Part shown: in pieces, positions 2,527 to 58,666 of the stretch
How the letters are laid out: every line of letters begins with the position of its first letter
Numbering within the stretch: the stretch's first letter is position 1
Notes under the pieces: model-generated
Told to the model about the DNA's origin: nothing
Database searches by the model: none
What the model saw: the letters and a program-made list of their open reading frames with translations, nothing else
Position numbers and translations under genes: made by a program
From: Macrostomum lignano
Lineage: Eukaryota
DNA: 64,000 nucleotides
Assembly: GCA_002269645.1 (NCBI GenBank)
Contig: NIVC01000981.1
Span: 329,592-393,591 of the forward strand
Direction: 5' to 3'

Positions 2527-5500
2527 TCAGGCGGTGGAACTCTCCTCCAAGAGATGTTGCTCGCAATCTTGCAATTGATTTCCATCATCGGACGGCTGAA
2601 AGCGCGAAAATATTGCAGTTTAATTATAGAATACTATAATTATACAGACTCTTTCTGCATAAAAGAGTTTTCTTTGAGAATTTCCATTTCGAGATTTCGT
2701 TACATGTTTACATATATTCACCTCAATACATGTAGAAATTTAAAATTACCAGAAAGAATACCTCGTACTTTACGAATGAGATTCAAATTGGATTCCCCGA
2801 ATATAATGTCCCAAACGGAATTTCCCGAAAGGGATTCCCCAGTCGGATTCCCCAATTGGATTCCCGAATGAGATTTTCCGAATGGAGATTCTCAGAGTAG
2901 GATTCCTCAAACAGAAATCCCCCATTAGATTCCCAGAATGGGATCCTCTAATCGAATTCCAGGAATGAAATTCCAGAAAATGGAATTCCCCGAACAGGCT
3001 TCTCCGAATGAGATTCATCGAATGGGATTCCCCGAACGAGATTCCCCGAATGGGATTCCCCGAATGGGATTCCCCGAATGGGATTCCCCGAATGAGATTC
3101 CCTGAATGGGATTCCCCAAATGGGATTCCGCGAATGAGATTCCACGAATGGGATTTCCCGAATGGGATTCCCCGAATGAGATTCCCTGAATGGTATTCCC
3201 CAAATGGGATTCCGCGAATGAGATTCCACGAATGGGATTTCCCGAATGGGATTCCCCGAATGGGATTCCCCGAATGGGATTCCCCAGATGAATGAAATAA
3301 TCCGTAAAGAATTCTCCGAATTAGATTACTCAAGTCGATTTCCCAATTGAGACTTCCGAATAGGATTCCCTTGAGCTTCATGCTAAAAAGATGTAAGTCC
3401 CCAGATTGAAATCCCCTCGCTCACCTCTCTCATCTGAGCCTCTTCCTCCCAGTCGGGTTGCGCTGGTACGGGGATCACCAACTCGACTCCATCGGAGGCC
3501 GCATCGTCAACCTCGCCATCAGCGACAGTCAAAGCTACGGTAGACTTGGATCGCATCCGTTTATTAGCGAACCATTTCTTCACCTGAGCATAGTTCAATC
3601 CGGTGAGAGCCGATAGCGCCTTGGTGTCCTCCCCAGTCGGGTAGGGCTTGTCGCTGTGCTCGCAGAACCACTTCAACAGCTGGCGATTCTGAGTCGGAGT
3701 AAAATTCTGACGCTGAGTTTTGCCCTGCGACTGTGGCGAGTCCGCTCGCTGCTGCTCGGAGTCGACTGTAGCCGTGTCCAGCGTCGGGTCCTTCAACGAC
3801 GGGCTGCTCTGATGACTGCGACCGCGAGCGCCGCGAGCACCTCCGGCTCGTTGTCGATTTTGTCGCCGGATGCGCCCGGCTGACCGCTTTGAATTCGATG
3901 AAGAAGCGGCTGCTGACTGCTGCTGCTGCTGCTGCTGAAGAGACGCCAAGAGTTTTGCTTCCTTCACCGATAAGTCCAACACTGATGAGGCAAAGTCTTC
4001 CTGCGACTGCGGCTGCTGCTTCGGTTCCACGGCTGTCACTGGGAGCTGGCAGAGGGTTTGATTGGCAATTGGCCAAAAATAAATATCACTATCTAGCATA
4101 GTGATAGTAGTGTAGCAGCATACTATAAGGATAGATTTTTAATGGAAAATAAAATTGAAAATGAAACCAGTTTTTATTTATTCTCCAAGTTTCAGTTGGA
4201 CGATTTCTTAGATCAATCTAACCCACGCTCACCTTCTCCCTCTCACTTTTGTCCCTCACATCACCCTCTCGCCCTCACCCTCACTCTCACCCTCTCTCTC
4301 ATCCTCTCTCTCACTCTTACCCTCTCTCTCACCCTCTCTCTCACTCTCACCCTCTCTCTCATCCTCTCTCTTACTCTTACCCTCTCTCTCACCCTCTCTC
4401 TCACTCTCACCCCCTCTTTCCTTCATCCTCACCCTCTCCCTTAACCTCTCCCTCACCCTCTTCCTCTCCCTCACCCTCTCTCTCAGCCTCACCCTCTCCC
4501 TCTCCCTCACCCTCTCACTCTCTCCCACCCTCTTCCTCACCTGCAGTGCCGAAGGGGTGGCGGCTCCCAGCTGCATAGCGGTGGCACCATTGAAGCTCAG
4601 GCTGTGAAGCGGCGCCCCGGTCACGGCAGTCACAGCGGCAGCAGACGTGAGCAGCTGATGATGAAGATGCTGCTGCTGCTGCTGCTGCTGCTGAGTGAGT
4701 CTGGCCGCCTCCCACAGTTTAAACGGCAGGTAAAGTCCAGATGAAATTGCCAGAGCTGTGGTGCCGGTTGCTGGGTAGTTGCCAATGGCTAGAACGGTGG
4801 TGTCAGTTCTCTGTGACGGAGACTGCAGCAGATTCTGCTGTTGCTGTGGTAGAAATTTCTGATGCTGCTGTCTGTTGCTTTTATTTGCCTGTCTCACAAC
4901 CAGCTGCTGCTGTTGGCTGCTACTTCGAATTAAGTTCAGGTTCTCAGCGACGCCGTTTCTGGGATGGAACTCCAGCGATGGCAGCGGCTGAGCAGTGGTG
5001 TCAGCTTCAGCTCTCACTGCTGGCTGACTCTCAGGCCCTTGGCTGGGATCGGTTGGCAACTTTTCCTGAGGAGTTTAATGGAATTGAATATGCGGGACAC
5101 CTGTTTTCGGTACAGCTGGTGGTTTGGTAGAGTAGACATAAGAGAAATTAGAGTAGACATTGTTAGAGGTGAGAGTAGACACTGTCAGAGTGGTGAGAGT
5201 AGACATTGTCAGAGAGGTGAGAGTAGACACTGTCAGAGAGGTGAGAGTAGACATTGTCAGAGAGGTGAGAGTAGACATTGTCAGAGAGGTGAGATAGATA
5301 TTGTCAGAGAGGTGAGAGTAGACATTGTCAGAGAGGTGAGAGTATGTCAGAGAGGTGAGAGTAGACACTGTCAGAGAGGTGAGAGTAGACATTGCCAGAG
5401 CCCTCACCGGAACTGTCAGTTTCCGCTTTCTTGATCCGGTAGCAATGCTTGGTGATGCCTGCTGCTTCAAAGCGGAGTCCTGCATTTTCTGCTCCTGGCC

Positions 5501-14100: not shown

Positions 14101-14984
14101 TGCTTTTTTGTGTTTAGCATTTTGTGTTTTTAAGGTTTTTGAATAAAAAAATCTTTTTGCACTACTAAGATTCGAACCCAGGTCGCAGCATTAGCAGTCC
14201 AGTCTGTTCGCATCTATGCTATCTCTTGTCTTGAATTGTGGCCCTTATAATTTAATTCTTATAGCAAATCAGTTAGAGTAAAAAGTTATGACATAATCAA
14301 TTTCTCAGTCAGCCAGTATCAGTGTCAATTTAAGTTAGCAATATTGTTACGCAATTTAAATCAAGTTTTGTGTGCATTTGTTCGGCACTGTTTTCAACTG
14401 GTTGTGATGTAATCTTTATCACAATTGGAATTCAGTCAGTCAGTTTTTTCTCTAGCATTCTTACAATGCATTTCAGGTCGAAAGAGCTGCTTGACCTTTG
14501 CAAAAAAGCATGTTTTTCGAATATTTAATCCCTTTATCATTGAGCAATTTCTTAGCCAAGATGCATGTATCGTCCCAGGAAAATTTCTGATCGAATGGTG
14601 CAAGTTTGAAGAAAATCGGTTGAGCCATTTTTTCTGAAATCTATCGCATACCTACCTACCTACCCACAGACAACTCATTTTTAGTATATAGGACTAGCAA
14701 TTTAAGCCCCCCGTTGGGGGGCGCAAGAATGACGCCAAGTGGTTTTTATTTTGGCCTATGAGTAATAACCTTACTAATTATTAAAAATCCATTAATCAAA
14801 ACTTACTTTTCCTCATTCTTGGCAAAAATAAATTGCCATGAATCAAAACCTTCACCAGCCAAAGTTTCCTTCATCAGCCCAAAACCCTTTCTCATTCAGC
14901 AAATAGTACTTATCCTTTCAAGCACAAACTCTTAGTGCATTTCGTCATTGGCCTGGGCATATTCTGGTCCGCAGCAGGAGCTCA

Positions 14985-16400
14985 ATATGCCATAAGCCTT
15001 GATGACATCTCAATAATTTCCCCAGTAAGCTTTGTCATCGCAGAAATCCCCCCAGTAAGCCTTGATATCGCAGCAATTCCCTCAATAAGCCTTGACATTG
15101 CAGCAACGCAAAGGCGAGCCTTGGCATCAACGCAATTCTCCCAGCCCAGTAAGCCTTGACATCTCAGAAATTTCCCCAGTAAGCCTCGACATCGCAGCAA
15201 TTACCCCATTAAGCCTTGAAATCTCAGAAATCCCCCCAGTAAGCCTTGACATCTCAGCAATTCCCTCAGTAAGCCTTGAAATCTTATAAATTCCCCCAGT
15301 AAGCCTTGAAGTCTCAGTAATTCCCCCAGTAAGCCTTGACAACTCAGCAATTCCCCCAGTAAGCCTTGACATCTCAGTAATTCCCCAGTAAGTCTCGAAT
15401 CTCAGTAATTCCCCAGTAAGTCTCGAATCTCAGTAATTCCCCAGTAAGTCTTGACATCTCACAATTCCCCCAGTAGGCCCTGACATCTCAGCAATTCCCC
15501 CAAGTAAGCCTTGACATCTCAGCAATTCCCCCAGTAAGCCTTGAAGTCTCAGTAATTCCCCCAGTAAGCCTTGACAACTCAGCAATTCCCTCAGTAAGCC
15601 TTGACATCTCAGTAATTCCCCAGTAAGTCTCGAATCTCAGTAATTCCTCCAGTAAGTCTTGACATCTCACATTTCCCCCAGTAGGCCCTGAAATCTCAGC
15701 AATTCCCCCAAGTAAGCCTTGATATCTCAGTAATTCCCCCAGTTAGCCTTGACCTCTCAGTAATTCCCCCAGTAAGCCTAGAAATCTCAGCAATTCCCCC
15801 AGTAAGCCTTGACATTTCAGCAATTCCCCCAGTTAGCCTTGACCTCTCAGCAATTCCCCCAGTAAGCCTTGACATCTCAGCAATTCCCCCCGTCAGCCTT
15901 GACATCTCAGAAATTTCCCCAGTAAGCCTCGACATCGCAGCAATTACCCCAGTAAGCCTTGACATCTCAGAAATTTCCCCAGTAAGCCTCGACATCGCAG
16001 CAATTACCCCATTAAGCCTTGAAATCTCAGAAATCCCCCCCAGTAAGCCTTGACATTGCAGCAATTAAACTCGAGCCTCGGCATCTACGCAATTCTCCCA
16101 GTCCAGTAAGCCTCGAGATCGCAGCAATTCCCCCAGTAAGCCTTGACATCTCAGCAAATTCCCCAGTAAGCCTTGACATATCAGTAATTCCCCCCAGTAA
16201 GCCTTGACATCTCAGCAATTCCCCCAGTAAGCCTTGAAATCTCAGCAATTCCCCCCAGTAAGCCTTGACATCTCAGCAAATTCCCCAGTAAGCCTTGACA
16301 TCTCAGCAATTCCCCCCAGTAAGCCTTGATATCGCAGCAATTCCCCCAGTAAGCCTTGACATCGCAGCAATTAAACTCCAGCCTCGACATCTATGCAATT
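14985..16400. repeat. 30-bp minisatellite (GTAAGCCTTGACATCTCAGCAATTCCCCCA), decaying to about 17000
   Basis: 10-aa period MSRLTGGIAE in ORF track. Confidence 0.95.
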
Positions 16401-22044: not shown

Positions 22045-24585
<2,541 letters not shown>

Positions 24586-25640: not shown

Positions 25641-26954
25641 ATGCGCGAGCCCTACCTAGCGGATTTCTTGTGGCATCGTTATCAACTGCTGCGAGCCCCA
25701 ATAGACAGTGTAAATAGTGTCAGGTCTAAGGAGGATAGCAGCAATGATAGCAGTCTGGATAACAACAGAGAACTGTGCTCACCGCATATCCTAGGCAATG
25801 GCACATACAACTCAGCAATCGACAGTCGCAGAGCAATCAGTGAATTCGACTATTGGCTGAGATACGGCTGTGTGTCGTGGCTATTCCCTTTAATGTGGCT
25901 AGTGGCTGTCGTTGGCATCACCGTTACCTTAGTTACCGTTCGCAAGCATCCTAAAGTGATTCCATCAACTACTAGAGTACTATTAGTTAGTCTATTCATT
26001 GTGGACGCTCTGGTGCTGAGCATTGTAGGCCTGCGCTGGTGGTCCTACACTGTATTCGGTGCGGATTTCCGCAACAGCTACGCCCTACTAAGCGCCGTGT
26101 TTAACTACGCTAATTATCTTCTTGTTCACCTGTCCGGCTGGCTGCAGGCCTTCATATTTGTGGAACGAATGCTAGTTGTCCGCGATCCAATGCTAGCCAA
26201 GACTTATTTAAGACGCGGCCGGGCCAAGCTATGCATTGCTATTTTGCTTGGCACGCTGGCTCTGCTCAACTTACCTGTCGCTTTTCTGACTTACAATTTT
26301 GCCGAGTCGAGCGTGGCAGCTGATAGCACAGTTCGGCTGATGTGCTCAGAGTGGGCCTACATCGGTTTGAAAGTTGTTGGCTTGGCCGATCTGCTAGTTG
26401 GAAGTGTGCTGCCTTTGCTAATTATGCTCACTGGCACCGTTGTGATCTCAGGTGCCCTGCTGTCGCACAAGGAGATGCTGGCGGGGTCTCGGTCAACTCC
26501 ATCGCCTCAGGCTTTAGCCGCCTCGGCCGTGGCTAATGACAGTCGGGTGCATTCGTCTGGCAAGAGGCGCAAGCGACAGCAAAGAATCTGCGTTGTATCG
26601 CTGGCTATGAACGGGCTCTATCTGGTTACTAACTACCCGCTGACTGTTGTACTGCTATATACTACTTTCAGTAGGCAGTCGGGTTTTCCGCCTACGTTCT
26701 CCGCTTTCACCATCTTGTACCTGGTGTCGCTAATTAATAACGCTAGCAACTGGGCGCTGCTTACGCTTACTGGTAGAGGCTACAGAAAGAAATTAGCCAG
26801 CGTGTTGAAATGCCATGGCAACGGTGTTGGCGGCGGCGCCGGGACCGGCTGCTGTTACCAGCTGCAGCATCCTTATCCCACTGTACAACTGGCTAGAAGG
26901 CGGATGAATACCAGGGGCAGTTCCGCTTCAGCTATGGTCATCTTACCGAACTGA
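25641..26954 (+). CDS. Rhodopsin-family (class A) GPCR, peptide-receptor-like, 437 aa, single coding exon
   Basis: Seven hydrophobic segments, N-terminal N-glycosylation sites, TM3 FIFVERMLVVRDP (DRY-equivalent ERM), TM7 NNASNWALLTLTGRGYRKKL (NPxxY/helix-8 equivalent). An acceptor-like ttttttaactttccag ending at 25520 suggests a 5'UTR intron. Confidence 0.88.
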   Translation: MREPYLADFLWHRYQLLRAPIDSVNSVRSKEDSSNDSSLDNNRELCSPHILGNGTYNSAIDSRRAISEFDYWLRYGCVSWLFPLMWLVAVVGITVTLVTVRKHPKVIPSTTRVLLVSLFIVDALVLSIVGLRWWSYTVFGADFRNSYALLSAVFNYANYLLVHLSGWLQAFIFVERMLVVRDPMLAKTYLRRGRAKLCIAILLGTLALLNLPVAFLTYNFAESSVAADSTVRLMCSEWAYIGLKVVGLADLLVGSVLPLLIMLTGTVVISGALLSHKEMLAGSRSTPSPQALAASAVANDSRVHSSGKRRKRQQRICVVSLAMNGLYLVTNYPLTVVLLYTTFSRQSGFPPTFSAFTILYLVSLINNASNWALLTLTGRGYRKKLASVLKCHGNGVGGGAGTGCCYQLQHPYPTVQLARRRMNTRGSSASAMVILPN

Positions 26955-28375: not shown

Positions 28376-28467
<92 letters not shown>

Positions 28468-28469
28468 CT

Positions 28470-28506
<37 letters not shown>

Positions 28507-28543
28507 GTGTCTGTCTGTCTGTCTGTGTGTCTGTCTGTCTGTG

Positions 28544-28574
<31 letters not shown>

Positions 28575-28623
28575 CTGTCTGTGTGTCTGTCTGTCTGTCT
28601 GTCTGTCTGTCTTTCTGTGTGCG

Positions 28624-28676
<53 letters not shown>

Positions 28677-28687
28677 TTCTGTGTGTG

Positions 28688-28719
<32 letters not shown>

Positions 28720-28721
28720 CT

Positions 28722-28762
<41 letters not shown>

Positions 28763-28799
28763 GTGTCTGTCTGTCTGTCTGTGTGTCTGTCTGTCTGTG

Positions 28800-28830
<31 letters not shown>

Positions 28831-28895
28831 CTGTCTGTGTGTCTGTCTGTCTGTCTGTCTGTCTTTCTGTCTGTGTGTCTGTCTGTCTGTCTGTG

Positions 28896-28930
<35 letters not shown>

Positions 28931-28931
28931 G

Positions 28932-28998
<67 letters not shown>

Positions 28999-29019
28999 GT
29001 GTCTGTCTGTCTGTCTGTG

Positions 29020-29066
<47 letters not shown>

Positions 29067-29075
29067 GTGTCTGTG

Positions 29076-29172
<97 letters not shown>

Positions 29173-29191
29173 GTCTGTCTGTCCGTCTGTA

Positions 29192-29240
<49 letters not shown>

Positions 29241-29251
29241 TTCTGTGTGCG

Positions 29252-29304
<53 letters not shown>

Positions 29305-29315
29305 TTCTGTGTGTG

Positions 29316-29375
<60 letters not shown>
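28375..29375. repeat. (TCTG)n microsatellite, about 1 kb
   Basis: Direct reading. Confidence 0.98.
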
Positions 29376-39830: not shown

Positions 39831-42498
39831 GGAGGGGGACCGCGCTGCGGACACCAGCACCACCGGATCTCCCTGCGCGACACCGCAGCACCAGCTGCCT
39901 GTGGTCGCCAGGGGTTAGCGAAACGGCGTTGTATCGGGATGCCCAGAACCCCTGCAGCTGAGTCAAGTAAGTCAAAAGGAAAACTTACCAAACCTAAGAT
40001 ATTTTGAGCAGTTACTCACAGCATTTGGTTCCAATATGACTCTGCCGCCGAACCTCGCATACAGCTCGTAGGGCAGAGCGGACAGCAGGATATATGAACC
40101 AGGAGTTCCTCGAACTAACCTGTTAGGCTGTTACCGCTCAGGTCGGAGCCTTCAGTGAGGCTCACCCGAAGTGAGTCCATGGTTGGCGGGCTCACAAAAA
40201 AGCTGAGAGCGTCGGTGACCAGCTCTCCGTCTGGCTTCATGAAGTAGGCCACAACTCTTGCCACTGGCGCCATCTCTCGCGACAGCGCGATGGAGAAGGT
40301 CTTGGCTGGAGCACCGCTTGGCATGCTGACAGTGTCGCTGAATGCGATGTTCCCTCCAGCCTCGATGAGGTAGTGAATCTCGGGCGTAAAGTGAGTAGTT
40401 CGAATGTTGAACACCATGTAGCGATCTGCGGCCGGTCTGTCAGTCGAAGTGCTCACTCTGAGATAAGCTCCTGTGGCCGAGTAGTGACGAAAGATGAACT
40501 GCTCAGAAGTCTTTGCGGCCGAACTGCCTTCAGACTGGAGCACCGCCACCAGCCTGTAGTTGATGCAGTCTCTCGTGGTCGGCACAGTGTAGCGAACTAT
40601 TGAGTCATCAGGAATGGGAATCCCCCGATCCGCATTCACCGAATTTCCAGTGTTGCAATAGAGATTCACGTTCACGTGCCGCCTGCGCAAATTCGGCTTC
40701 CTGCCGTCCGGTTGAAAAATGTGCATCTGAAATTTGAGCGGACGAGCACAGCGGTAGCAAACCAATCAATGTCACTGGTTGGACAGTGGCTAGTTAAAAC
40801 TGACGCCATACCAAAGCGATGAAAGGAAATCCGGGTTTGAACTGACTCTACCGCCCAGGAACTTGATGTTCGGCGTTTCTCGGAATATCACCGTGTGAGC
40901 GGCGTGCGAGATGTTCAACAGGTAGTACCAGTCCAGTACGCTGGCGTCCACTGTCACGTCGATGTCATCAACTAGCGCTGCCATTTTCAGCTCCTTCTTG
41001 ATCTCGCTCATCGTGAACAGAAACGAAGCACGTCCTTTGAACTGTCGAGTTTATTCGTGTAAAATTGATGTGGCATTTCAATGCTACAGTAGGTGGTGTC
41101 TTAAAGAACTTTGATAGCTACATGTAGATAAGCGACAAGTACTTACATACGGTATGAATCGCCACATGGTTCCCAATGGTGAAGTCTCGGTCAGCGCGCC
41201 TCTGTTTCTAAACTGCAATCGCAGGGTTGCATTTCCTGTAGTGGGCGCATTGGTCGTGTGATTGGCCTCCAAAATGCCGTAGACACCGAAGGAGAACTCG
41301 GAGAGTTTCAGCGGCAGGCTCACGTTGACGGACAGCGGGCCACTGTTGGTGTTGTAGAAAACTGTGAAAGATTTCTCCGTAGCGAATCTTCCACTCGCCG
41401 TGACTGCAGGTTGGGGGCAGCTGGAAACTCAACTCAATATAGCCTCGGGCATTGGTTCTTGGTGAAAGCCATCGTCTCACGGCGATGCCGTTTGAGTCCA
41501 CAACCTCGATGGTGTTCAATACTCGACTCTTGACCGTCAGATCAGCTTCATACGGTATCACTCGGAACTTGATTAGATCGCCCATTGCATAAATTGGCTT
41601 TGAGAACTGAATGTATGTTGAGAATAGTTTGGGCTCGACCAGCAGTTCCGTTCTGTTTTGAAACAACAGACCAGCCTTCGACTCGACGGATCCTTCAACA
41701 AGGATGCTTACTTCCCCAATGGAGCATTCTCTGGCACCTGAAGTGCAAATACGAGTAGTTCAAGCTCAATGCATCAAAATATTGTTGGCATCGCACGTTA
41801 GTTGAATGCTTTGATAGTGATTGTGGCTATTTTCTGCATGCTGTGTTGCAACAAAAAATCTCAAATCTTTTCTTTCAGCCTGAGCAGGTCTCTTCGTCCT
41901 TCTCTACATGGCATTGCGTTCTGCACGTTCTGTTATAGCGCTTTTAGAGTGGAATATGCTATTTGGCATTGCGTTCTGTCCGCTAAATTACAGTATCTGC
42001 CGCGGTGCAGAGAATAACTTTCTATGAACCGCACTAGTGAACGACTCTCAAATGACTCACCGTTAGGAAAAGTGGTCGGGTTGCTGGTTTAGTGAATGTC
42101 TCCGAAGCGAAGGCCAGTTCTCGTTCCGGTTGATCAGCTTTGCCAGATTTGGCGTCCGGCTTCGCTCTTAGAGACACTCTAAATGAGAGGCTGCCGTGCA
42201 GGAGACGGAATACCGTGATGCTGATTCGCACCTTTTGCTCTGGACGAATTTTCTTTGGCGCTAACAGCAGATAGGTTCTGTAAGATTTTTGTTTATTTGG
42301 CCGGAAGGTGTCTGAATGGTACGGAAAGACAGTACGGATTGACTGACTGCATGCCGTTACTTACGGGGTTGAAGACAACTCTATGGACGTTTGTGGTAGA
42401 AAAGTTAATTGTTGCTGTTGCTGTTGCTGTCGCTGTTGTTGTTGTTGCTGTTGTCGTTGTTGTTGTTGTGTGTGTGTGTGTGCCTCGGACCGGAGCTC

Positions 42499-45400
42499 TC
42501 AGGTGATCCACTGCGGGTGGGCCACCCTCAAGAACCCTATCACCATGTTCTCCTCGCGCAGATCCTTCAGTTCACGCAGACCAGTGTGCTGCCGAAGCCC
42601 GTCCCAACGCGCGCACGACCACCAGTGGTCTTTATCTTCTATGTCACCGCAGTCCTCGCAAACGCCTTCTGCTTCCAGACCAATCTTCTGCCTCCAGTAC
42701 TTAGTGAGTCTGCAGTGACCAGACCTGAGCTGGGCTAAGATGGAAGCAACTTTCCTGCCACATTCCGCGCGTTCAATCACACCACCGTACACCGAGCGCA
42801 GACGGGGGTCATTTATGCAGGGCCTCCACCGGTGCTTCAGGTGTCTGCGTAACGCCTCAAACTCAACGGCCGTCTGCCCTTGGGGCAAGAGCGCTGCCTG
42901 CTTTGCCAGCTCGTCGGCCCTCTCATTTCCAGCGATGCTGCAGTGGCCTGGGATCCACTGGAGGGTGATGCTGCACCATACACTCGTCCTCCTGAGCCTG
43001 TCAATCAAGTTAAATTGGCTCCTGTTTCCAGTGACCCTCTCGGTACCGGTGGCCAAGACGGCGGACTTGCTGTCAGTCAGGATGAGAGCGCTACTTGGCC
43101 TCAGCTCTTCCACAAGATCTAGCGCCAGGTGCAAAGCCGTTCTTTCCGCGATAAGGGAGCTACAGAATTCGCCCGCTGCAGCTAACTTGCAGTACTCACG
43201 TTCATCGCACCAGGCGACACAGGCCGCTCCTCCGTTCCTTCCGTTTCCGTCTACAGAGCCGTCCGTGAAGATTTTCAACTCGACCTGACCTCTTTCCTGG
43301 ATGGTTCGAGCCGCGTCTTCTGCGATGTCTTCATCACCCTTCTTGGCATTGCCGGATAGGTCGGGAAACAACCCGACCCCGTCGAGTCTGAGCCTTCTCC
43401 AAGGGGGGTGCCTTTTCCTCATGAATTCCTCCCTGGGAGCCTCGCTGATGGATCTACTTTCATACCTCGCTTGCTCGCGCCATCCCTTGTTTGCCTTAAG
43501 TCTCCTGGGGAGGACGATGTCGCACATATCACGCTTGAGGCTGGGTCGGGGCTCGCGCTCAGCTTTCTCCCATTCGAGAACGCAGCGCAGGATCGCTTTT
43601 TCGGAAATGGGCGGGATTCCTGTTTCCAGGTGAACCGCTTCCACCGGCGTTGATTTCACGAGCCCAGCTGTCAGACGGAGGGCTTCACGCTGCGCCCGCT
43701 CGATCTTTTGAACGTTGGTCTTCGAAATCCAGGGTAACCAAGCTGCCGCGGCGTACCAAACGCAGCTCTCAACGATCGCAGAGTAAACTTTCTTTAGACT
43801 CTCCGCCTGCCAGCCCCATTCCGTATTGGCCACCGCCTTGAGAACCCTGCTTCTTCGGCGCATTTTATCGACCACGGCGTCCGTGTGTTCCTGGAAATTG
43901 AGGCCACGGTCGATGCGCACTCCCAGGTACTTAAGCGAGACTTTCCCCGCGATCTCCTTTCCGCTAATCCAGAGCTTCGGGTGGCGATTTTTGTCTTTCG
44001 TGGACTTGCTGAAGAGGCAGGATTCGCACTTCCCTGGGTTCAGCTCAATTTTAAGGCCATCCGCCCAGCCGCCGATCTTATCCAGCGCACGCTGCAGGCG
44101 TTTAGTGATCTCCTCGGTGTCATCTCCGCTGCACCAGACTGCCAGGTCATCCGCGAAGCCGCCGTACTGCACTCCCTCCTCTTTCACACCGGTCCAACCA
44201 TTTACATACAGGAGGAACAGAACAGGGGAGCTCACCGCGCCCTGCGGGAGACCTTCCTGGAGGCGTCTGTATTTGCTGTTGCCGTCCCCGGCACGGACTC
44301 TGGCTTGTCTTCCTTCCAAGAAGCTAGCAAACCACCTTGTGATCCTGGCTGGGACGCCCTCCTCCATCATTCTCTCAAGGAGTTTCACTCTCCAAACTTT
44401 TTCGAACGCTTTCGAACAGTCCAATGTCACGGCCAGAGTTTTTTTTGGTTTTTTGCTCTCCCAGCCGTCTTGAATGTGCTGCACAAGCCTGAGCACCTGT
44501 TCCTCGGTGCTTCTGCCCCTCTGGAAGCCGGCTTGCCAGGGCTGAATGATGTTATTCTCCTCCAGCCAGAAGTACAACCTGTTCACGACCATCCTTTCCA
44601 TGAGCTTGGCGCAGACCGGAGTTAGGCTGACCGGTCTGTAGGATTCCTTCGCCGCTGGGTCTTTGCCGGGTTTAAGCAACGGAACGATTTCCGCTTTCTT
44701 CCAGGACCCAGGGCATAGCTCATCTGCCCAGCTTCTGTTGAAAACATCCAACCATCTCTGACGGCCTACTACGGAGAGGTTTTTAAGAAGCCGAACTTCA
44801 ACTCCGTCAACTCCCCCCTTCTTCGTTGGGTCCATCAGCTTGAGCGCATCATCCATCTCATCCATAACGAATGGTGTGTCAAACTCCTGGTGCGCGTTAT
44901 AGGCTCTTAGTCTTCTAGCCACCTCCACCCGCTTGACCCGGTCCGCCTTCCCGATCTTGACCTTACTGTTATCAGCGTACATGCTAACGAACACAGCCGC
45001 CTTTTCGACATCCGATCTGGCTTCGCGCCCTTTGTCAGCTAAAATTTGGTTAGGCGGGGCAGTATCTCTAGCTGAGTACAGTGATTTGATGGTACTCCAG
45101 GTCTTCTTCCCGTCGTCGTTTTCTTTAAGGCTTTCCACATGTTCGGCCCAGAAGGACCGCTTCTTTTCCCTGATTTTAGCCTCCAGGTTCCTGTTTACCT
45201 CCAACCACTTTTCTCTGCTGACAGTCGTGCTTCTAGAGCAGTTGTCCCGCTCATTCTGCAGAGCGCTCAGTTCATCGTCCCAAAAAGGTTTGTACTTTCC
45301 TCCCACTTTCTTCTTAGGGATGCTCAACTCCGCCGCCTTGACCATGGCTGCACTCAGCCCTCTGACCTCGGCTGCTAACTCGGTCCTTGGCACTTTCTCG

Positions 45401-46884
45401 AACAGATCATCCGCATTACGTTGGAACTCCGAGAAGTCCGCTTTCTTCCACGCCCAGTTTAGCTTGGTCTTCTTTTGCCGGATTTCTCTCCTGGTAGCCA
45501 CGGTGACCAGGATGGGGAGATGGTCTGAGCCGAGACCTTCGAGGGTTTTCCACTCGCAGCGCTCCGCCAGCTCTCCCGCCGCCAACGAAATGTCCGGGAC
45601 GCTGGTCCGTCCTGTACGCCAATCCACGCGCGTCGCGGCTCCATCGTTTAGGATCCTGTAGTCAAATTCTTCGCACCAGGATTCCAGCTCTAAAGCCTCC
45701 CTTCTGCTGTCTCTTCCTTGGTCGTCACAGCTTCCCCAGCTTCTGCTGTGTAGGTTTAAGTCGCCGAGAATCAGCTCTCTTCTGTCTGGTTTAAGCCAGC
45801 TCCAGACACTATCATCCTCCCTGTCGTCACTGCCTTCGACAGTGCGCACAGGGGGGCGGTAAACATTAGTGATGACACACCTTTCCTTCCTGTTAACGTC
45901 CACGATCACGCGGCAGCCCTCCGTGGTAGTGCCTTTCCAGCCTGTCCAGCGCTTGAAAGGAAGATTGTGCTTGATCAGGGTGATCAGGCCTCCCCCTTTA
46001 GACTTATCGCTTCTGCGGATCTCCACCCTGTCCTTCCGGGCGGTGGTGTAGCCGGCGAAGCGGGGGGTTGGCGACTCGCTGTCAAGTTTAGATTCCTGAA
46101 TGACAGCCACGTCAATGTCATGCGCTTTCAGAAACCGCTCAAGCTCCACTTTCTTATTTCTAATGCCATCGGCGTTCCATTGCAGAATCCTCAGGTTTTC
46201 CCTCCGGGCGCTCGACCAGCCCTCGCCGGCCGGGTTTCTGGTCTCTTCCTTATCCACGGCGATATTATCGGTTCTGGCTCTTTCCAACTTGTCTGAGCAC
46301 ATCTGGCAGGTCCAAAGGCCTTTTTTAATTTCACCGTCGATTTGAGCTCTGCTGGCTCCAGTACACTTGTTATGGAACAGTTCGTCACATCTAGTGCACC
46401 GCGCAATAACCTTAGTGACCTTGAGCTTGCCTCCACAGCCAGGCTTAGCACATCTGCTACCCTTCTCGATCCTCTCGATGCAGCGTTTTCTTCTCTCCTC
46501 AGCCGCCGCGGCATCTTCCGCCAACCAATCCTCCTGCTGAGAGCATCCGCCGCACTTCCAATCCTTCTTTCCTTCTCTCGCTTTGCTCTGGCCCGCTCTA
46601 GTCAAGCCTGTGCAGCTGCCGTGGACTTCGTTACCGCAGCCGACGCAGCGGACCGGGTTTTGGCCCCTAGTGATGTTTTTTCCACATCTGGCGCACGGGC
46701 CAGGGTTGGGTTCCACATCGCCGTCCCTGTCAAGCCGCTCAGTTCTCCAGCCTCTCCTGTCTTCCTGCGCGTTGGTAGCGGGTTTCACAGCATACCCTTC
46801 CAATCTCTTCCACCCTCTCTTATCATGGTGAACATGGTGATCCGCGTTACTCCGGGTGTTCGTATCCAAATTAGGAACTCTCAT
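42499..46884 (-). CDS. LINE polyprotein (1461 aa from ATG 46884): 2A - PHD - PHD - APE - RT - RNase H - zinc knuckle
   Basis: GDVEPNPGP; CARC..CVGC..HGSC..WKCGGC and CAKPGC..CTRC..HNKC..WTCQMC; LQWNADG, QESK, GDLNLH, GSDHLPI; YRPVSLT, QAGFQRGRST, DCSKAFE, GLPQG, FADD; FTDGS, TDSK, WIPGH..GNERADELAK. Confidence 0.92.
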   Translation of the reverse strand: MRVPNLDTNTRSNADHHVHHDKRGWKRLEGYAVKPATNAQEDRRGWRTERLDRDGDVEPNPGPCARCGKNITRGQNPVRCVGCGNEVHGSCTGLTRAGQSKAREGKKDWKCGGCSQQEDWLAEDAAAAEERRKRCIERIEKGSRCAKPGCGGKLKVTKVIARCTRCDELFHNKCTGASRAQIDGEIKKGLWTCQMCSDKLERARTDNIAVDKEETRNPAGEGWSSARRENLRILQWNADGIRNKKVELERFLKAHDIDVAVIQESKLDSESPTPRFAGYTTARKDRVEIRRSDKSKGGGLITLIKHNLPFKRWTGWKGTTTEGCRVIVDVNRKERCVITNVYRPPVRTVEGSDDREDDSVWSWLKPDRRELILGDLNLHSRSWGSCDDQGRDSRREALELESWCEEFDYRILNDGAATRVDWRTGRTSVPDISLAAGELAERCEWKTLEGLGSDHLPILVTVATRREIRQKKTKLNWAWKKADFSEFQRNADDLFEKVPRTELAAEVRGLSAAMVKAAELSIPKKKVGGKYKPFWDDELSALQNERDNCSRSTTVSREKWLEVNRNLEAKIREKKRSFWAEHVESLKENDDGKKTWSTIKSLYSARDTAPPNQILADKGREARSDVEKAAVFVSMYADNSKVKIGKADRVKRVEVARRLRAYNAHQEFDTPFVMDEMDDALKLMDPTKKGGVDGVEVRLLKNLSVVGRQRWLDVFNRSWADELCPGSWKKAEIVPLLKPGKDPAAKESYRPVSLTPVCAKLMERMVVNRLYFWLEENNIIQPWQAGFQRGRSTEEQVLRLVQHIQDGWESKKPKKTLAVTLDCSKAFEKVWRVKLLERMMEEGVPARITRWFASFLEGRQARVRAGDGNSKYRRLQEGLPQGAVSSPVLFLLYVNGWTGVKEEGVQYGGFADDLAVWCSGDDTEEITKRLQRALDKIGGWADGLKIELNPGKCESCLFSKSTKDKNRHPKLWISGKEIAGKVSLKYLGVRIDRGLNFQEHTDAVVDKMRRRSRVLKAVANTEWGWQAESLKKVYSAIVESCVWYAAAAWLPWISKTNVQKIERAQREALRLTAGLVKSTPVEAVHLETGIPPISEKAILRCVLEWEKAEREPRPSLKRDMCDIVLPRRLKANKGWREQARYESRSISEAPREEFMRKRHPPWRRLRLDGVGLFPDLSGNAKKGDEDIAEDAARTIQERGQVELKIFTDGSVDGNGRNGGAACVAWCDEREYCKLAAAGEFCSSLIAERTALHLALDLVEELRPSSALILTDSKSAVLATGTERVTGNRSQFNLIDRLRRTSVWCSITLQWIPGHCSIAGNERADELAKQAALLPQGQTAVEFEALRRHLKHRWRPCINDPRLRSVYGGVIERAECGRKVASILAQLRSGHCRLTKYWRQKIGLEAEGVCEDCGDIEDKDHWWSCARWDGLRQHTGLRELKDLREENMVIGFLRVAHPQWIT

Positions 46885-46918
46885 CCGCCGCGAAGAGGCC
46901 CCCAGAGTGTAGGACGAG
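46850..46918 (-). ncRNA. HDV-like self-cleaving ribozyme at the LINE 5' end
   Basis: Minus strand: P1 CTCGTCC/GGATGAG; P2 CTCTGGGG/C(A)CCCGGAG; P3 GCC/GGC; L3 TCTTCGC; J1/4 AG pairing with L3 CT (P1.1); P4 TCC-TAATTT-GGA; J4/2 CGAA with the catalytic C. The first nucleotide coincides with the TSD boundary. Folded by eye. Confidence 0.8.
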
Positions 46919-47884
46919 TGTTGTTGTTGTTGTTGTGCCAGATGCATCGCACCTGAATCAGGGACGGTGCCCGACTCCGGGCGCTCTTCGCTGCCCCAAA
47001 AAGTGACATTGCCTCTCCGCTGCGAGAAAGACGCGGTGCCGGATATGGCCTGCTGGTTACCTGGGGGCTGCTGTTGCTGCTTCATAATCATCTGCGCACT
47101 GCTTATTGACTGCGAACAATAACTCAGCAGAATGAGCAGTGAAATGGCAACCAATTTAACTCTAAATTGGATTAACCTCGTTTTGCAGAACATCTCACCT
47201 CGGTGTGTGACGTGTGGCTCTGGTATCGGATTTGCTCTTCAAGGTGATTCCAAATTTGATTGCAAATTTTGACAGGTGGTTGTCTTAGAAAAGTAGCCTC
47301 AAAGTGAAACCTACGGCCTGATATTTTCTTTAGAAAAATTCAAATTTAAAGAAAAACTTGACTACTTAAACTTTAGCAATTAACGAGATAAAGTCTGACT
47401 TGAGGTGGGGCAGGTCGGCTCGGCTCATTCACGGAGCGGCAGGTCAAGTGTTCAAAAATTCAACGAAACCGCTTGCTTTGAGTTGCCGCCCCCCGCGATA
47501 GCGGCTTCCATGTCTTTAAGGCCCAAACACAGACAATAAAAATTTAGGAATAAACTATTTATTTGTTAAGCTCAAATTATGAGACGCCCCTGTACAGGCT
47601 GATGACAGCATTTATTAAACCTAATTTTCAGGTTACTAAATCGTCCTAATTATCAACATTATAGGCAAGTTGGATACGGAGTCTCACAAAATCCATGTTA
47701 CTTGGCCAGCTCAGGTGAAAGAGTGCAATACTAGTAAGGTTTTTACTGAGTCAGCAGAAAAACGCATTTTAGGCTGCTATTGAGAAACTCAACGACTTAT
47801 TTTCGCAATAACAAAGTATCTTTATCGAATTTGAGTAAAATCTACTTATATTTGAATAATTACTGCAAATATAGTGTCTAAATA

Positions 47885-48331: not shown

Positions 48332-58666
<10,335 letters not shown>

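What the first reader, a model, noticed from the sequence alone, without database searches (positions are those of the whole stretch)
46850..46918. Complete HDV-like ribozyme forming the exact 5' end of an intact animal Ingi-type LINE
Seen in sequence: on the minus strand CTCGTCC-TACA-CTCTGGGG-GCC-TCTTCGC-GGC-GGATGAG-AG-TTCCTAATTTGGAT-ACGAA-CACCCGGAG supplies every element of the nested double pseudoknot. These are a 7-bp P1, a P2 with one bulged A, a 3-bp P3, L3, P1.1, P4 and J4/2 with C-G-A-A. P1.1 shows a compensatory change (CT:AG instead of the usual CC:GG). The predicted cleavage site (5' of 46918) falls exactly on the TSD boundary. Established knowledge: HDV-like ribozymes process the 5' ends of R2 and trypanosomatid L1Tc/ingi elements, and the latter also begin with a C1-G pair as here. 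Inference: this element excises its own RNA from host read-through transcripts and so needs no promoter of its own. The element's first ATG (46884) lies inside the P1 3' strand, so the RNA is both catalytic and coding.
Basis: partly seen in the sequence, partly recalled or inferred. Interest (0 to 1): 0.85.

Follow-up and report, generated by a model that had tools for sequence, protein, structure and literature searches.

The report
Self-cleaving ribozyme heading a flatworm-type LINE
The first 70 bases of an intact jumping gene (a LINE) in this animal genome fold into a hepatitis-delta-like self-cleaving RNA that relatives keep through compensating mutations, so the element most likely cuts itself out of host transcripts, a trick already known from other LINEs.

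Summary
Window 46918..46849 (-) meets a full HDV-like descriptor: 7-bp P1, 9-bp P2 with a bulged A, 3-bp GC P3, 2-bp P1.1, short P4 and J4/2 CGAA with the putative catalytic C at 46862. It is the only strong match in the window.

The motif alone is only modestly improbable (0.03-0.17 expected per shuffled window). Context makes the case:
- It starts exactly where a (CAA)n target-site duplication ends.
- It lies about 210 nt upstream of a 2A skipping peptide (DVEPNPGP) that opens an intact 1461-aa PHD-APE-RT-RNase H ORF.
- Relatives fetched by protein similarity alone carry the same fold at the same place. These include Macrostomum lignano (55% aa identity) and metagenome contigs.
- Across three of them, 9 of 21 pairs change on both sides, 98% of cells stay paired, and L3, CGAA and the C1-G first pair are conserved.

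Best explanation: a 5'-terminal HDV-like ribozyme that frees LINE RNA from host or tandem co-transcripts, as in L1Tc/ingi and R2. It is a new member of a known kind.

- The AUG inside P1 is not conserved.
- "Ingi-type" was not tested by phylogeny.
- Promoter independence is inference.

The family has (CAA/CAG)n directly 5' of most copies. This copy and the M. lignano one sit sense and in frame inside polyQ-coding host exons.

The parts
46849..46918 (-). HDV-like ribozyme, 70 nt; predicted cleavage 5' of C46918
   Evidence: Descriptor hit. Same fold in relatives with covariation.
46912..46918 (-). P1 5' strand CUCGUCC (C1 = 46918)
   Evidence: Pairs with 46880-46886 (7 bp, one G.U). 4 of 7 pairs change on both sides among window, L001 and L005b.
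46900..46908 (-). P2 5' strand ACUCUGGGG
   Evidence: Pairs with 46849-46858 around a bulged A (46857). 5 of 9 pairs change on both sides. P2 is also recovered by the nested MFE fold.
46887..46899 (-). P3 GCC / L3 UCUUCGC / P3' GGC core
   Evidence: Invariant GCC..GGC in window, L001 and L005b. Resembles the R2 core CCUCCUCGUGG quoted in PMC5035012.
46880..46886 (-). P1 3' strand GGAUGAG, holding the first AUG (46884-46882)
   Evidence: The AUG is in frame with the ORF but not conserved in relatives.
46878..46879 (-). P1.1 3' nucleotides AG, pairing with C46895 and U46894 of L3
   Evidence: CG and UA pairs in window and L001; one pair lost in L005b.
46863..46877 (-). P4 region, minimal 3-bp stem UCC/GGA
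   Evidence: P4 length varies among relatives (9-52 nt), as expected of a peripheral helix.
46859..46862 (-). J4/2 CGAA; C46862 is the putative catalytic cytosine (C75 equivalent)
   Evidence: CGAA is invariant in all nine ribozyme-like 5' ends found.
46849..46858 (-). P2 3' strand C-A(bulge)-CCCGGAGU
   Evidence: The bulged A at the second position is shared with L001, L005b and L002.
46919..46937 (-). 5' copy of the target-site duplication, (CAA)n: CACAACAACAACAACAACA
42452..42470 (-). 3' copy of the target-site duplication: CACAACAACAACAACGACA
   Evidence: 15 nt exact, 19 nt with one mismatch.
46696..46719 (-). 2A ribosome-skipping motif DVEPNPGP
   Evidence: Translation. Canonical D(V/I)ExNPGP. 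Present in many relatives.
42499..46884 (-). LINE ORF from AUG +35 to the stop (1461 aa). The frame stays open upstream to 47193 through the host exon.
46297..46695 (-). Two PHD/C1-like zinc fingers between the 2A and the endonuclease
   Evidence: Pfam PF00628 and PF00130, both below their curated cut-offs.
45520..46185 (-). APE-type endonuclease domain
   Evidence: PF03372 and PF14529.
43912..44667 (-). Reverse transcriptase domain (FADD motif)
   Evidence: PF00078, E = 1.8e-34. Matches PDB LINE-1 ORF2p.
42892..43278 (-). RNase H domain
   Evidence: PF00075, E = 3e-13. Matches PDB RNase HI.
42469..42498 (-). 16-nt 3' UTR plus (CA)7 tail
   Evidence: L001 has the same layout, a 21-nt UTR plus a (CA)n tail.
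46919..47193 (-). Host exon, 5' part: ATG, signal-peptide-like N-terminus, Q-rich tract, in frame with the LINE
   Evidence: Reading it as a host exon is inference.
42365..42468 (-). Host exon, 3' part: (CAA/CAG/CGA)20 then LTFLPQTSIELSSTP, ending at a GTAAGT donor (GT at 42364-42363)
   Evidence: The empty-site reconstruction stays in frame.

Best explanation
Window 46918-46849 (-) is a functional HDV-like (delta-type, nested double-pseudoknot) self-cleaving ribozyme that forms the first 70 nt of an intact single-ORF LINE (2A, PHD fingers, APE, RT, RNase H). Proposed mechanism: (1) The element is transcribed as part of a longer RNA. Here that is a host gene whose polyQ-coding exon it interrupts in sense orientation; elsewhere it is an upstream tandem copy. 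(2) The ribozyme cleaves 5' of C46918 using C46862 in J4/2, giving an RNA whose 5' end is exactly the element's first base. (3) The stop-free leader (AUG at +35 in this copy) is translated, and the 2A motif releases the enzymatic protein from whatever lies upstream. (4) The protein copies the RNA back into (CAA/CAG)n tracts by target-primed reverse transcription from its (CA)n/(CAA)n tail. Shown here: the fold, its exact coincidence with the element boundary, its conservation with compensatory changes, the intact ORF and 2A, and the (CAR)n flanks. Inferred: catalysis, co-transcription, the mode of translation, and target choice.
For: Structure: a strict descriptor hits exactly 46918..46849. 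It is the only hit in 128 kb with a 7-bp P1, a 9-bp P2, a GC P3, a P1.1 and CGAA. Boundary: the TSD and the end of the microsatellite fall at 46919/46918, and the empty-site exon reconstructs in frame. Relatives fetched by protein only: the M. lignano locus L001 (55% aa) has the same fold at 3965-4044, 199 nt before its 2A and directly after host (CAA CAG)n. L005b at 5102-5164 and L002 at 40-107 share the bulged-A P2, the GCC/GCG P3, a UCUUCG-like L3, CGAA and C1-G. Variant HDV folds occur at the same position in L003/L004, L005a, L008 and L184. Covariation across window, L001 and L005b: 98.4% of cells paired, 9 of 21 pairs changed on both sides, 0 of 500 shuffles as good, slid registers 42-50% paired. 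Negative control: 161 bacterial or viral sequences match the core pattern GCCTYTTCGYGGCG..A..CGAA, and none has P1 plus P2. Rfam RF02682 (HDV-F-prausnitzii) aligns L001 from exactly the predicted +1, at 23.4 bits and E = 0.008 in a 121-nt search. Two copies of one family (L003, L004) are identical from the predicted +1 onward and differ at -1 and -5 upstream, in CAA-like flanks. Precedent: L1TcRz occupies the first 77 nt of L1Tc and cleaves at C1 (PMC3185411). HDV-like ribozymes process R2, Baggins and RTE co-transcripts (PMC6765202). 2A peptides lie at the N-terminus of Ingi-clade ORFs, including an animal one (PMC3708506).
Against: No cleavage assay has been done. No Rfam HDV family reaches even E = 10 on the window copy. 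The nested-only MFE is unremarkable (z = 0.16), which is expected for a pseudoknot but gives no support. The motif alone is only p of about 0.03-0.17 per window. The relaxed descriptor used for distant relatives has a background of 0.12-0.2 hits per kb, so each variant fold is weak taken alone. P4 is only 3 bp. The first pair is C1-G rather than the G.U of HDV and R2. No second copy of this exact family could be examined in the same genome. Several more distant relatives (L006, L007, L009, L010/14, L012/13, L180-183) gave no descriptor hit.
Confidence: 0.8

Rival explanations
1. The region is a conserved structured 5' element with a non-catalytic role. Candidates are an IRES-like platform for cap-independent translation, a binding site for the element's own protein, or an internal promoter like Pr77 of L1Tc. 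On this view the HDV-like fold does not cleave.
For: HDV-like ribozymes of R2 and L1Tc have been proposed to aid translation initiation, and Pr77 doubles as a promoter (PMC6765202; PMC3383444 abstract). The leader is stop-free from +1 to the 2A in 7 of 8 elements and sometimes lacks any AUG, which suggests unusual initiation. The window copy has a minimal P4 and a C1-G pair.
Against: CGAA with the cytosine in the catalytic position is invariant in all nine 5' ends, and L3 and P1.1 keep HDV-like positions. The genomic 5' end coincides to the nucleotide with the predicted scissile bond in every context seen. A non-cleaving structure would not explain that coincidence. These roles also do not exclude cleavage.
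Confidence: 0.1
2. Chance resemblance: a GC-rich coding leader happens to satisfy an HDV descriptor.
For: Shuffles give 0.03-0.47 hits per window depending on stringency. A second, weak hit exists at 14927-14991. There is no Rfam hit.
Against: The same fold is at the same position in relatives of 33-55% protein identity, with 9 double compensatory changes. None of 161 core-pattern matches elsewhere has P1 plus P2. The start falls exactly at the TSD boundary.
Confidence: 0.03
3. The conservation reflects selection on the encoded leader peptide, because the region is in frame with the ORF, and not on RNA structure.
For: The frame is open through the ribozyme in 7 of 8 elements.
Against: The leader peptides are essentially unrelated: SSYTLGASSRRMRV (window), PLYCPVASSWRVGA (L001), SLYLREPFRGEGDL (L005b). 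Meanwhile base pairing is kept at 98%. The 2A would discard this peptide anyway.
Confidence: 0.02

Closest known systems
L1TcRz / Pr77 hallmark of trypanosomatid L1Tc/ingi LINEs
   Same: An HDV-like ribozyme occupies the first ~70-77 nt of a single-ORF APE-RT-RNase H LINE. Cleavage is at C1 with a GC-rich start of P1. A 2A skipping peptide lies near the ORF N-terminus. TSDs are of about 12 bp or more. Copies form tandems and are co-transcribed (PMC3185411; PMC6765202; PMC3708506).
   Different: The host is an animal. P1.1 has 2 bp (L1Tc has 1-2). Two PHD-like fingers lie between the 2A and the APE. The tail is (CA)n/(CAA)n rather than poly(A). The 5' flanks are (CAA/CAG)n. No evidence was sought or found for promoter activity.
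R2 element 5' ribozyme
   Same: An HDV-like fold at the 5' end liberates the element from a co-transcript with its repeated target. The L3/P3 core is similar (R2 CCUCCUCGUGG against GCCUCUUCGCGGC here). The ORF is open upstream of any AUG.
   Different: R2 has a restriction-like endonuclease and no APE, RNase H or 2A. It targets 28S rDNA. Its P1 starts with G.U, and it often has a large J1/2.
HDV-family ribozymes in Rfam (HDV, CPEB3, drz-Agam, HDV-F-prausnitzii RF02682)
   Same: Same nested double-pseudoknot topology. RF02682 aligns the M. lignano relative full-length from the predicted +1.
   Different: That score is sub-threshold (23.4 against 44 bits). The window copy is not detected at all. 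The genomic context is different.
Microsatellite-specific LINEs (Waldo, Mino, Kibi, Koshi, Dong; Kojima & Fujiwara 2004, cited in PMC5035012; the names are from my own knowledge)
   Same: Insertion into simple repeats that match the element's own 3' tail.
   Different: Those belong to the R1/R4 clades and target other motifs. I know of no ribozyme or 2A reported for them. (CAA/CAG)n specificity here is inferred from about 8 junctions, not from a genome census.
2A-bearing animal LINEs (Ingi-1_AC, CR1/L2/Rex1/Crack families; Odon et al. 2013, PMC3708506)
   Same: An N-terminal 2A in a single-ORF APE LINE, sometimes with a PHD finger between the 2A and the APE.
   Different: That paper does not mention ribozymes ('ribozyme' occurs 0 times). 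Most of those clades lack RNase H.

Membership tests
HDV-like self-cleaving ribozymes | Nested double pseudoknot: P1, P2 crossing P1, P3 inside P1, P1.1 between L3 and J1/4, and P4 | tested here: met
   Descriptor hit at 46918..46849. All 19 P1/P2/P3 pairs are canonical.
HDV-like self-cleaving ribozymes | Catalytic cytosine in J4/2 (C75 equivalent), directly before the P2 3' strand | tested here: met
   C46862 in CGAA. CGAA is invariant in all related 5' ends.
HDV-like self-cleaving ribozymes | Helices supported by covariation among homologues | tested here: met
   9 of 21 pairs change on both sides, 98.4% of cells paired, 0 of 500 shuffles as good, slid registers 42-50%. Only 3 sequences, and P4 was removed for the alignment.
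HDV-like self-cleaving ribozymes | G1.U wobble closing P1 at the cleavage site (HDV, CPEB3, R2) | tested here: not met
   C1-G in the window and in the relatives tabulated. This matches L1TcRz, which is active with C1, so the feature is not universal.
HDV-like self-cleaving ribozymes | Match to a curated covariance model | tested here: not met
   No HDV-family hit on the window copy at gathering score or at E <= 10. The relative L001 gets RF02682 at 23.4 bits, against a gathering score of 44. These models omit the pseudoknots and are known to miss divergent members.
HDV-like self-cleaving ribozymes | Mg-dependent site-specific self-cleavage giving 5'-OH and 2',3'-cyclic phosphate | not testable with these tools
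   Needs an in vitro transcription and cleavage assay.
Ingi-clade LINE | Single ORF with APE, RT and RNase H, and no ORF1 | tested here: met
   Pfam domains in one 1461-1564 aa ORF.
Ingi-clade LINE | 2A-like sequence in the N-terminal region | tested here: met
   DVEPNPGP at 46719-46696. See PMC3708506.
Ingi-clade LINE | RT domain groups with ingi/L1Tc in a phylogeny of reference RT sequences | not tested
   No reference LINE library was available. The named homologues were uninformative, and the supplement of PMC3708506 is not held.
Ingi-clade LINE | Pr77 hallmark sequence at the 5' end | not tested
Only the shared fold and the C1 cleavage site can be stated.
Target-specific (microsatellite) LINE | Most copies are flanked by the same target motif | tested here: inconclusive
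   (CAA/CAG)n lies directly 5' of +1 in the window, L001, L003, L004, L005a, L005b, L006, L007 and L184 (two copies). It is absent in L002 and L008. Several of these are tandems in which the repeat is the upstream copy's tail. No genome-wide census was possible.

The most novel reading that the evidence does not exclude
This LINE lineage may be specialised to land in (CAA/CAG)n tracts, including polyglutamine-coding exons, in sense orientation and in the Gln reading frame. The junction register (CAR)n-CA|C is the same in the window, L001 and L005b. On this reading it exploits its host twice. Uncleaved host-LINE fusion mRNAs would be capped and translated from the host start codon, with the 2A peptide shedding the host polyQ leader. 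Ribozyme-cleaved RNAs would supply the exact-ended retrotransposition template. A related reading is that the ribozyme-plus-2A head is ancestral to the whole Ingi group, shared by trypanosomatid and animal elements.
Probability: 0.2. Interest if true: 0.75.

Novelty: new member of a known kind. Interest (0 to 1): 0.5.

Why it matters
HDV-like ribozymes at LINE 5' ends are established for R2, L1Tc/ingi, Baggins and RTE. This case does not change the picture, but it extends it in three ways. First, the same ribozyme-then-2A head seen in trypanosome L1Tc occurs in animal (flatworm-type and marine metagenome) LINEs. That points to an old, conserved module and supplies a set of natural variants with C1-G starts and minimal P4 for ribozyme biochemistry. 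I found no paper pairing 2A-bearing animal LINEs with ribozymes: the key 2A paper never mentions ribozymes, and a search for Macrostomum, non-LTR and ribozyme returned nothing. Second, the (CAA/CAG)n association and the two in-frame, sense insertions in polyQ exons suggest a testable link between target choice, host transcription and 2A-mediated release. Third, current Rfam models miss this group, so a new covariance model would improve LINE 5'-end annotation.

Tried and rejected
- Rfam at gathering score on the whole window, and at E <= 10 on 601-nt and 101-nt stretches: no HDV family.
- Nested MFE folding: recovers P2 and P4, but z = 0.16, which is uninformative for a pseudoknot.
- blastn of the element against the window: no second copy.
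- Genome contigs and viral-contig scans with the core pattern: 161 matches, all lacking P1/P2. They served only as a negative control.
- JGI metagenome relatives (L008-L018) and L180-L183: 2A present, but no descriptor hit except L008, which was folded by eye. L006, L007, L009 and L010/14 could not be folded convincingly by hand.
- MAFFT alignments of full ribozymes misaligned the 3' halves because P4 varies in length. I therefore counted pairs on a three-sequence alignment with P4 removed and on my own segment table.
- Global identity across the boundary was not discriminating at this divergence.
- Organism identification through the A2M-TED ORF: best hit only 26% identity, so the source species is not in the protein collection.
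- Ingi phylogeny: no reference sequences could be obtained.
- Ruminski et al. 2011 is not held.
- The second descriptor hit at 14927-14991 was rejected as chance: 5-bp P2, CTAA, and no LINE nearby.
Full report
**Observation.** The minus strand of window 46918-46849 reads CTCGTCC TAC ACTCTGGGG GCC TCTTCGC GGC GGATGAG AG TTCCTAATTTGGATA CGAA CACCCGGAGT. It required:
- a P1 of 7 bp;
- a J1/2 of 0-6 nt;
- a P2 of at least 5 bp, with an optional single bulge;
- a Watson-Crick P3 of 3 bp;
- an L3 of 6-8 nt;
- a 2-bp P1.1 between L3 and the two bases after P1;
- a P4 region;
- a J4/2 of the form C-N-R-A.

It returns exactly this site: 7-bp P1 (one G.U), 9-bp P2 with a bulged A, GCC/GGC P3, P1.1 CU:AG, and J4/2 CGAA. 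The only other hit in the window, at 14991-14927, has a 5-bp P2 and CTAA. It sits at the edge of a minisatellite with no LINE nearby, so I treat it as chance.

**Chance level.** I ran sixty dinucleotide shuffles in 2-kb blocks. They gave:

| Descriptor | Hits per shuffled window |
|---|---|
| loose | 0.47 |
| P2 of at least 7 bp | 0.17 |
| P2 of at least 7 bp and CGAA | 0.033 |

The motif alone is therefore suggestive, not compelling. Rfam finds no HDV family here, either at gathering score or at E <= 10. The nested-only MFE recovers P2 and P4 but is unremarkable (z = 0.16). Neither result carries much weight against a pseudoknotted, sequence-poor family.

**The element.**
- One reading frame runs from 47193 to the stop at 42499.
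- From the ribozyme onward it encodes a short leader, a canonical 2A skipping motif DVEPNPGP (46719-46696), and two PHD/C1-like zinc fingers.
- These are followed by an APE endonuclease, a reverse transcriptase and an RNase H (Pfam). The nearest solved structures are LINE-1 ORF2p and RNase HI.
- The ORF is uninterrupted, so the copy is intact.
- Other ORFs in the window encode a rhodopsin-type GPCR, an alpha-2-macroglobulin TED domain and a TALE homeobox, so this is an animal genome.
- The species is not in the protein collection.
- The closest LINE protein is from the flatworm Macrostomum lignano, at 55% identity.

**Boundaries.**
- After the stop come a 16-nt UTR, (CA)7 and then a (CAA/CAG/CGA)n tract.
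- Immediately 5' of C46918 lies GGCACAACAACAACAACAACA.
- The 19 nt before the element (CACAACAACAACAACAACA) recur after the (CA)7 tail as CACAACAACAACAACGACA. This is a target-site duplication.
- The microsatellite phase breaks exactly at C46918.
- Removing the element and one TSD copy joins an upstream ORF to QQQQRQQQ...LTFLPQTSIELSSTP, which ends at a GTAAGT donor. The upstream ORF has an ATG at 47193, a signal-peptide-like start and a Q-rich tract.
- The LINE therefore appears to sit inside a polyQ-coding host exon, in sense and in frame. This is inference.
- That context explains why the frame is open 275 nt upstream of the ribozyme.

**Relatives, retrieved by protein and not by ribozyme.**
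- *M. lignano (L001).* The strict descriptor hits 3965-4043, and the relaxed one extends the hit to 4044. This is 199 nt before the locus's own 2A. The fold is P1 CCCACTC/GAGTGGG, P2 TTGTCCAGTG/C-A-ACTGGACGA, P3 GCC/GGC, L3 TCTTCGT, P1.1 AG, and CGAA.
- *L001 context.* It too follows host GAGCAACAGCAACAGCA directly. It has a (CA)n tail, then host CAG repeats and a Pro-rich ORF. It is fused in the annotation to a COMPASS-Shg1 host gene.
- *Other close folds.* A tandem metagenome contig (L005) has the fold at 5102-5164, right after the upstream copy's (CAR)n tail. A beach-sand contig (L002) has it at 40-107.
- *Variant folds.* Variant HDV folds with the same CGAA and the same position occur in L003/L004, L005a and L184. 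L008 also has one, folded by eye.
- *Same-family pair.* L003 and L004 are two copies of one family. They are identical from the predicted +1 onward. Their upstream flanks are both CAA-like and differ at -1 and -5.
- *Background.* The relaxed descriptor has a background of 0.12-0.2 hits per kb. The variants count mainly through their position.

**Covariation.** For the window, L001 and L005b (P4 removed so that MAFFT keeps register):
- 98.4% of cells are paired.
- 9 of 21 pairs change on both sides (4 in P1, 5 in P2).
- 0 of 500 shuffles do as well.
- Sliding the 3' partner by 1-3 nt gives 42-50% pairing and 0-2 double changes.

P3, L3, CGAA and the C1-G first pair are conserved. The leader peptides encoded by the same bases are unrelated, so selection acts on the RNA. 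As a negative control, 161 bacterial or viral sequences match the core pattern GCCTYTTCGYGGCG...A...CGAA, and none has P1 plus P2. Rfam RF02682 aligns L001 full-length from exactly 3965, at 23.4 bits against a gathering score of 44.

**Mechanism.** The best-supported reading is the known one for LINE-borne HDV-like ribozymes:
- The element is co-transcribed with a host gene or an upstream tandem copy.
- It cleaves itself 5' of C1 through C46862.
- The RNA then carries the folded ribozyme at a 5'-OH end.
- The leader is translated and the 2A releases the enzymatic protein.
- Reverse transcription is primed at (CAA/CAG)n targets from the (CA)n/(CAA)n tail.

Only the anatomy is shown here. Catalysis, co-transcription and target choice are inferred. 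The AUG inside the P1 3' strand is real here (+35, in frame). It is not conserved: L001's first in-frame AUG is at +149, and L003/L004 have none before the 2A. What is conserved is a stop-free frame from +1 to the 2A, in 7 of 8 elements.

**Comparison with known systems.**
- *L1TcRz / Pr77.* This trypanosomatid L1Tc/ingi element is the closest analogue. It has the ribozyme in the first 77 nt, cleavage at C1, a GC-rich start of P1, a single APE-RT-RNase H ORF and an N-terminal 2A.
- *R2.* R2 shares the logic and a similar L3 core.
- *Differences here.* The host is an animal. PHD fingers are present. The tail and target are microsatellites. No promoter test was done.
- *Clade.* Ingi-clade membership is plausible from the architecture but was not tested by phylogeny.
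- *Literature.* The open literature I could search has no report of an HDV-like ribozyme in flatworm or 2A-bearing animal LINEs. Ruminski et al. 2011 could not be read.

**Verdict.** It is a new member of a known kind and of moderate interest. The most interesting loose end is the (CAA/CAG)n and polyQ-exon association, with in-frame, sense insertions in both copies that have genomic context.

Noticed in passing
window 46919-47193 and 42365-42468 (-); L001 3627-3964 and 8395-8700: Both LINE copies with genomic context interrupt polyglutamine-coding host exons, in sense orientation and in the Gln frame. A single ORF therefore runs from the host ATG through the ribozyme and the 2A into the LINE. 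The M. lignano copy is annotated as a fusion with a COMPASS-Shg1 gene.
   Followed up: partly
5' junctions: window 46919-46937; L001 3948-3964; L003 1-16; L004 75-100; L005 78-98 and 5060-5101; L006 ~2955-2991; L007 ~2973-2990; L184 2785-2808 and 7564-7599: (CAA/CAG)n lies directly 5' of the predicted cleavage site in most relatives, and the elements' 3' tails are (CAA)n or (CA)n. This suggests microsatellite-targeted insertion and frequent head-to-tail tandems. L002 and L008 lack it.
   Followed up: partly
L003 ~160-180, L006 ~3210-3225, L007 ~3400-3415, L008 ~510-525, L009 ~222-238, L010 ~325-340, L012 ~165-182, L013 ~10-26, L180 ~268-280, L181 ~222-233, L182 ~227-238, L002 ~140-155: More distant relatives carry a small hairpin whose loop is a run of 5-7 T (for example GACCG-TTTTTT-CGGTC), 50-90 nt upstream of the 2A codons. 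It is absent from the window element and from L001. It may be a slippery site or an initiation signal; its function is unknown.
   Followed up: no
L003 and L004, +1 to the 2A (225 nt); L005 104-421: Some relatives have no in-frame AUG between the ribozyme start and the 2A (L003/L004), or have a stop in that stretch (L005a). This hints at non-AUG initiation, read-in translation, or decayed copies.
   Followed up: no
window 14927-14991 (-): A second, weak HDV-descriptor match (P1 GGCATAT/ATATGCC, 5-bp P2, J4/2 CTAA) lies at the edge of a 30-bp-period minisatellite. No LINE is nearby. It is consistent with the chance rate of about 0.5 per window.
   Followed up: yes
window 22045-24583, 28376-29375, 48878-49915, and many others: The window is unusually rich in simple repeats: (ATCT)638, (TGTC)251, (CTA)346, and more than 15 minisatellite arrays of 13-34 bp period. 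These arrays produce the long artefactual ORFs and the extreme GC and AT skews.
   Followed up: partly
L001 265-376 (-): A sub-threshold Rfam match to U4 snRNA (28.3 bits against a gathering score of 46) lies upstream of the M. lignano locus.
   Followed up: no
L181 1-75: A 12-nt tandem repeat (CCAATGGCAACG, six copies) precedes the 5' region of a distant relative, in place of (CAA)n.
   Followed up: no
window 25641-26954 (+), 50304-51905 (-), 3383-4099 (-): Host genes in the window: a rhodopsin-family GPCR, an alpha-2-macroglobulin TED-domain protein whose best database hit is only 26% identical, and a TALE-class homeobox. They show the window is from an animal whose proteome is not in the searched collection.
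   Followed up: partly
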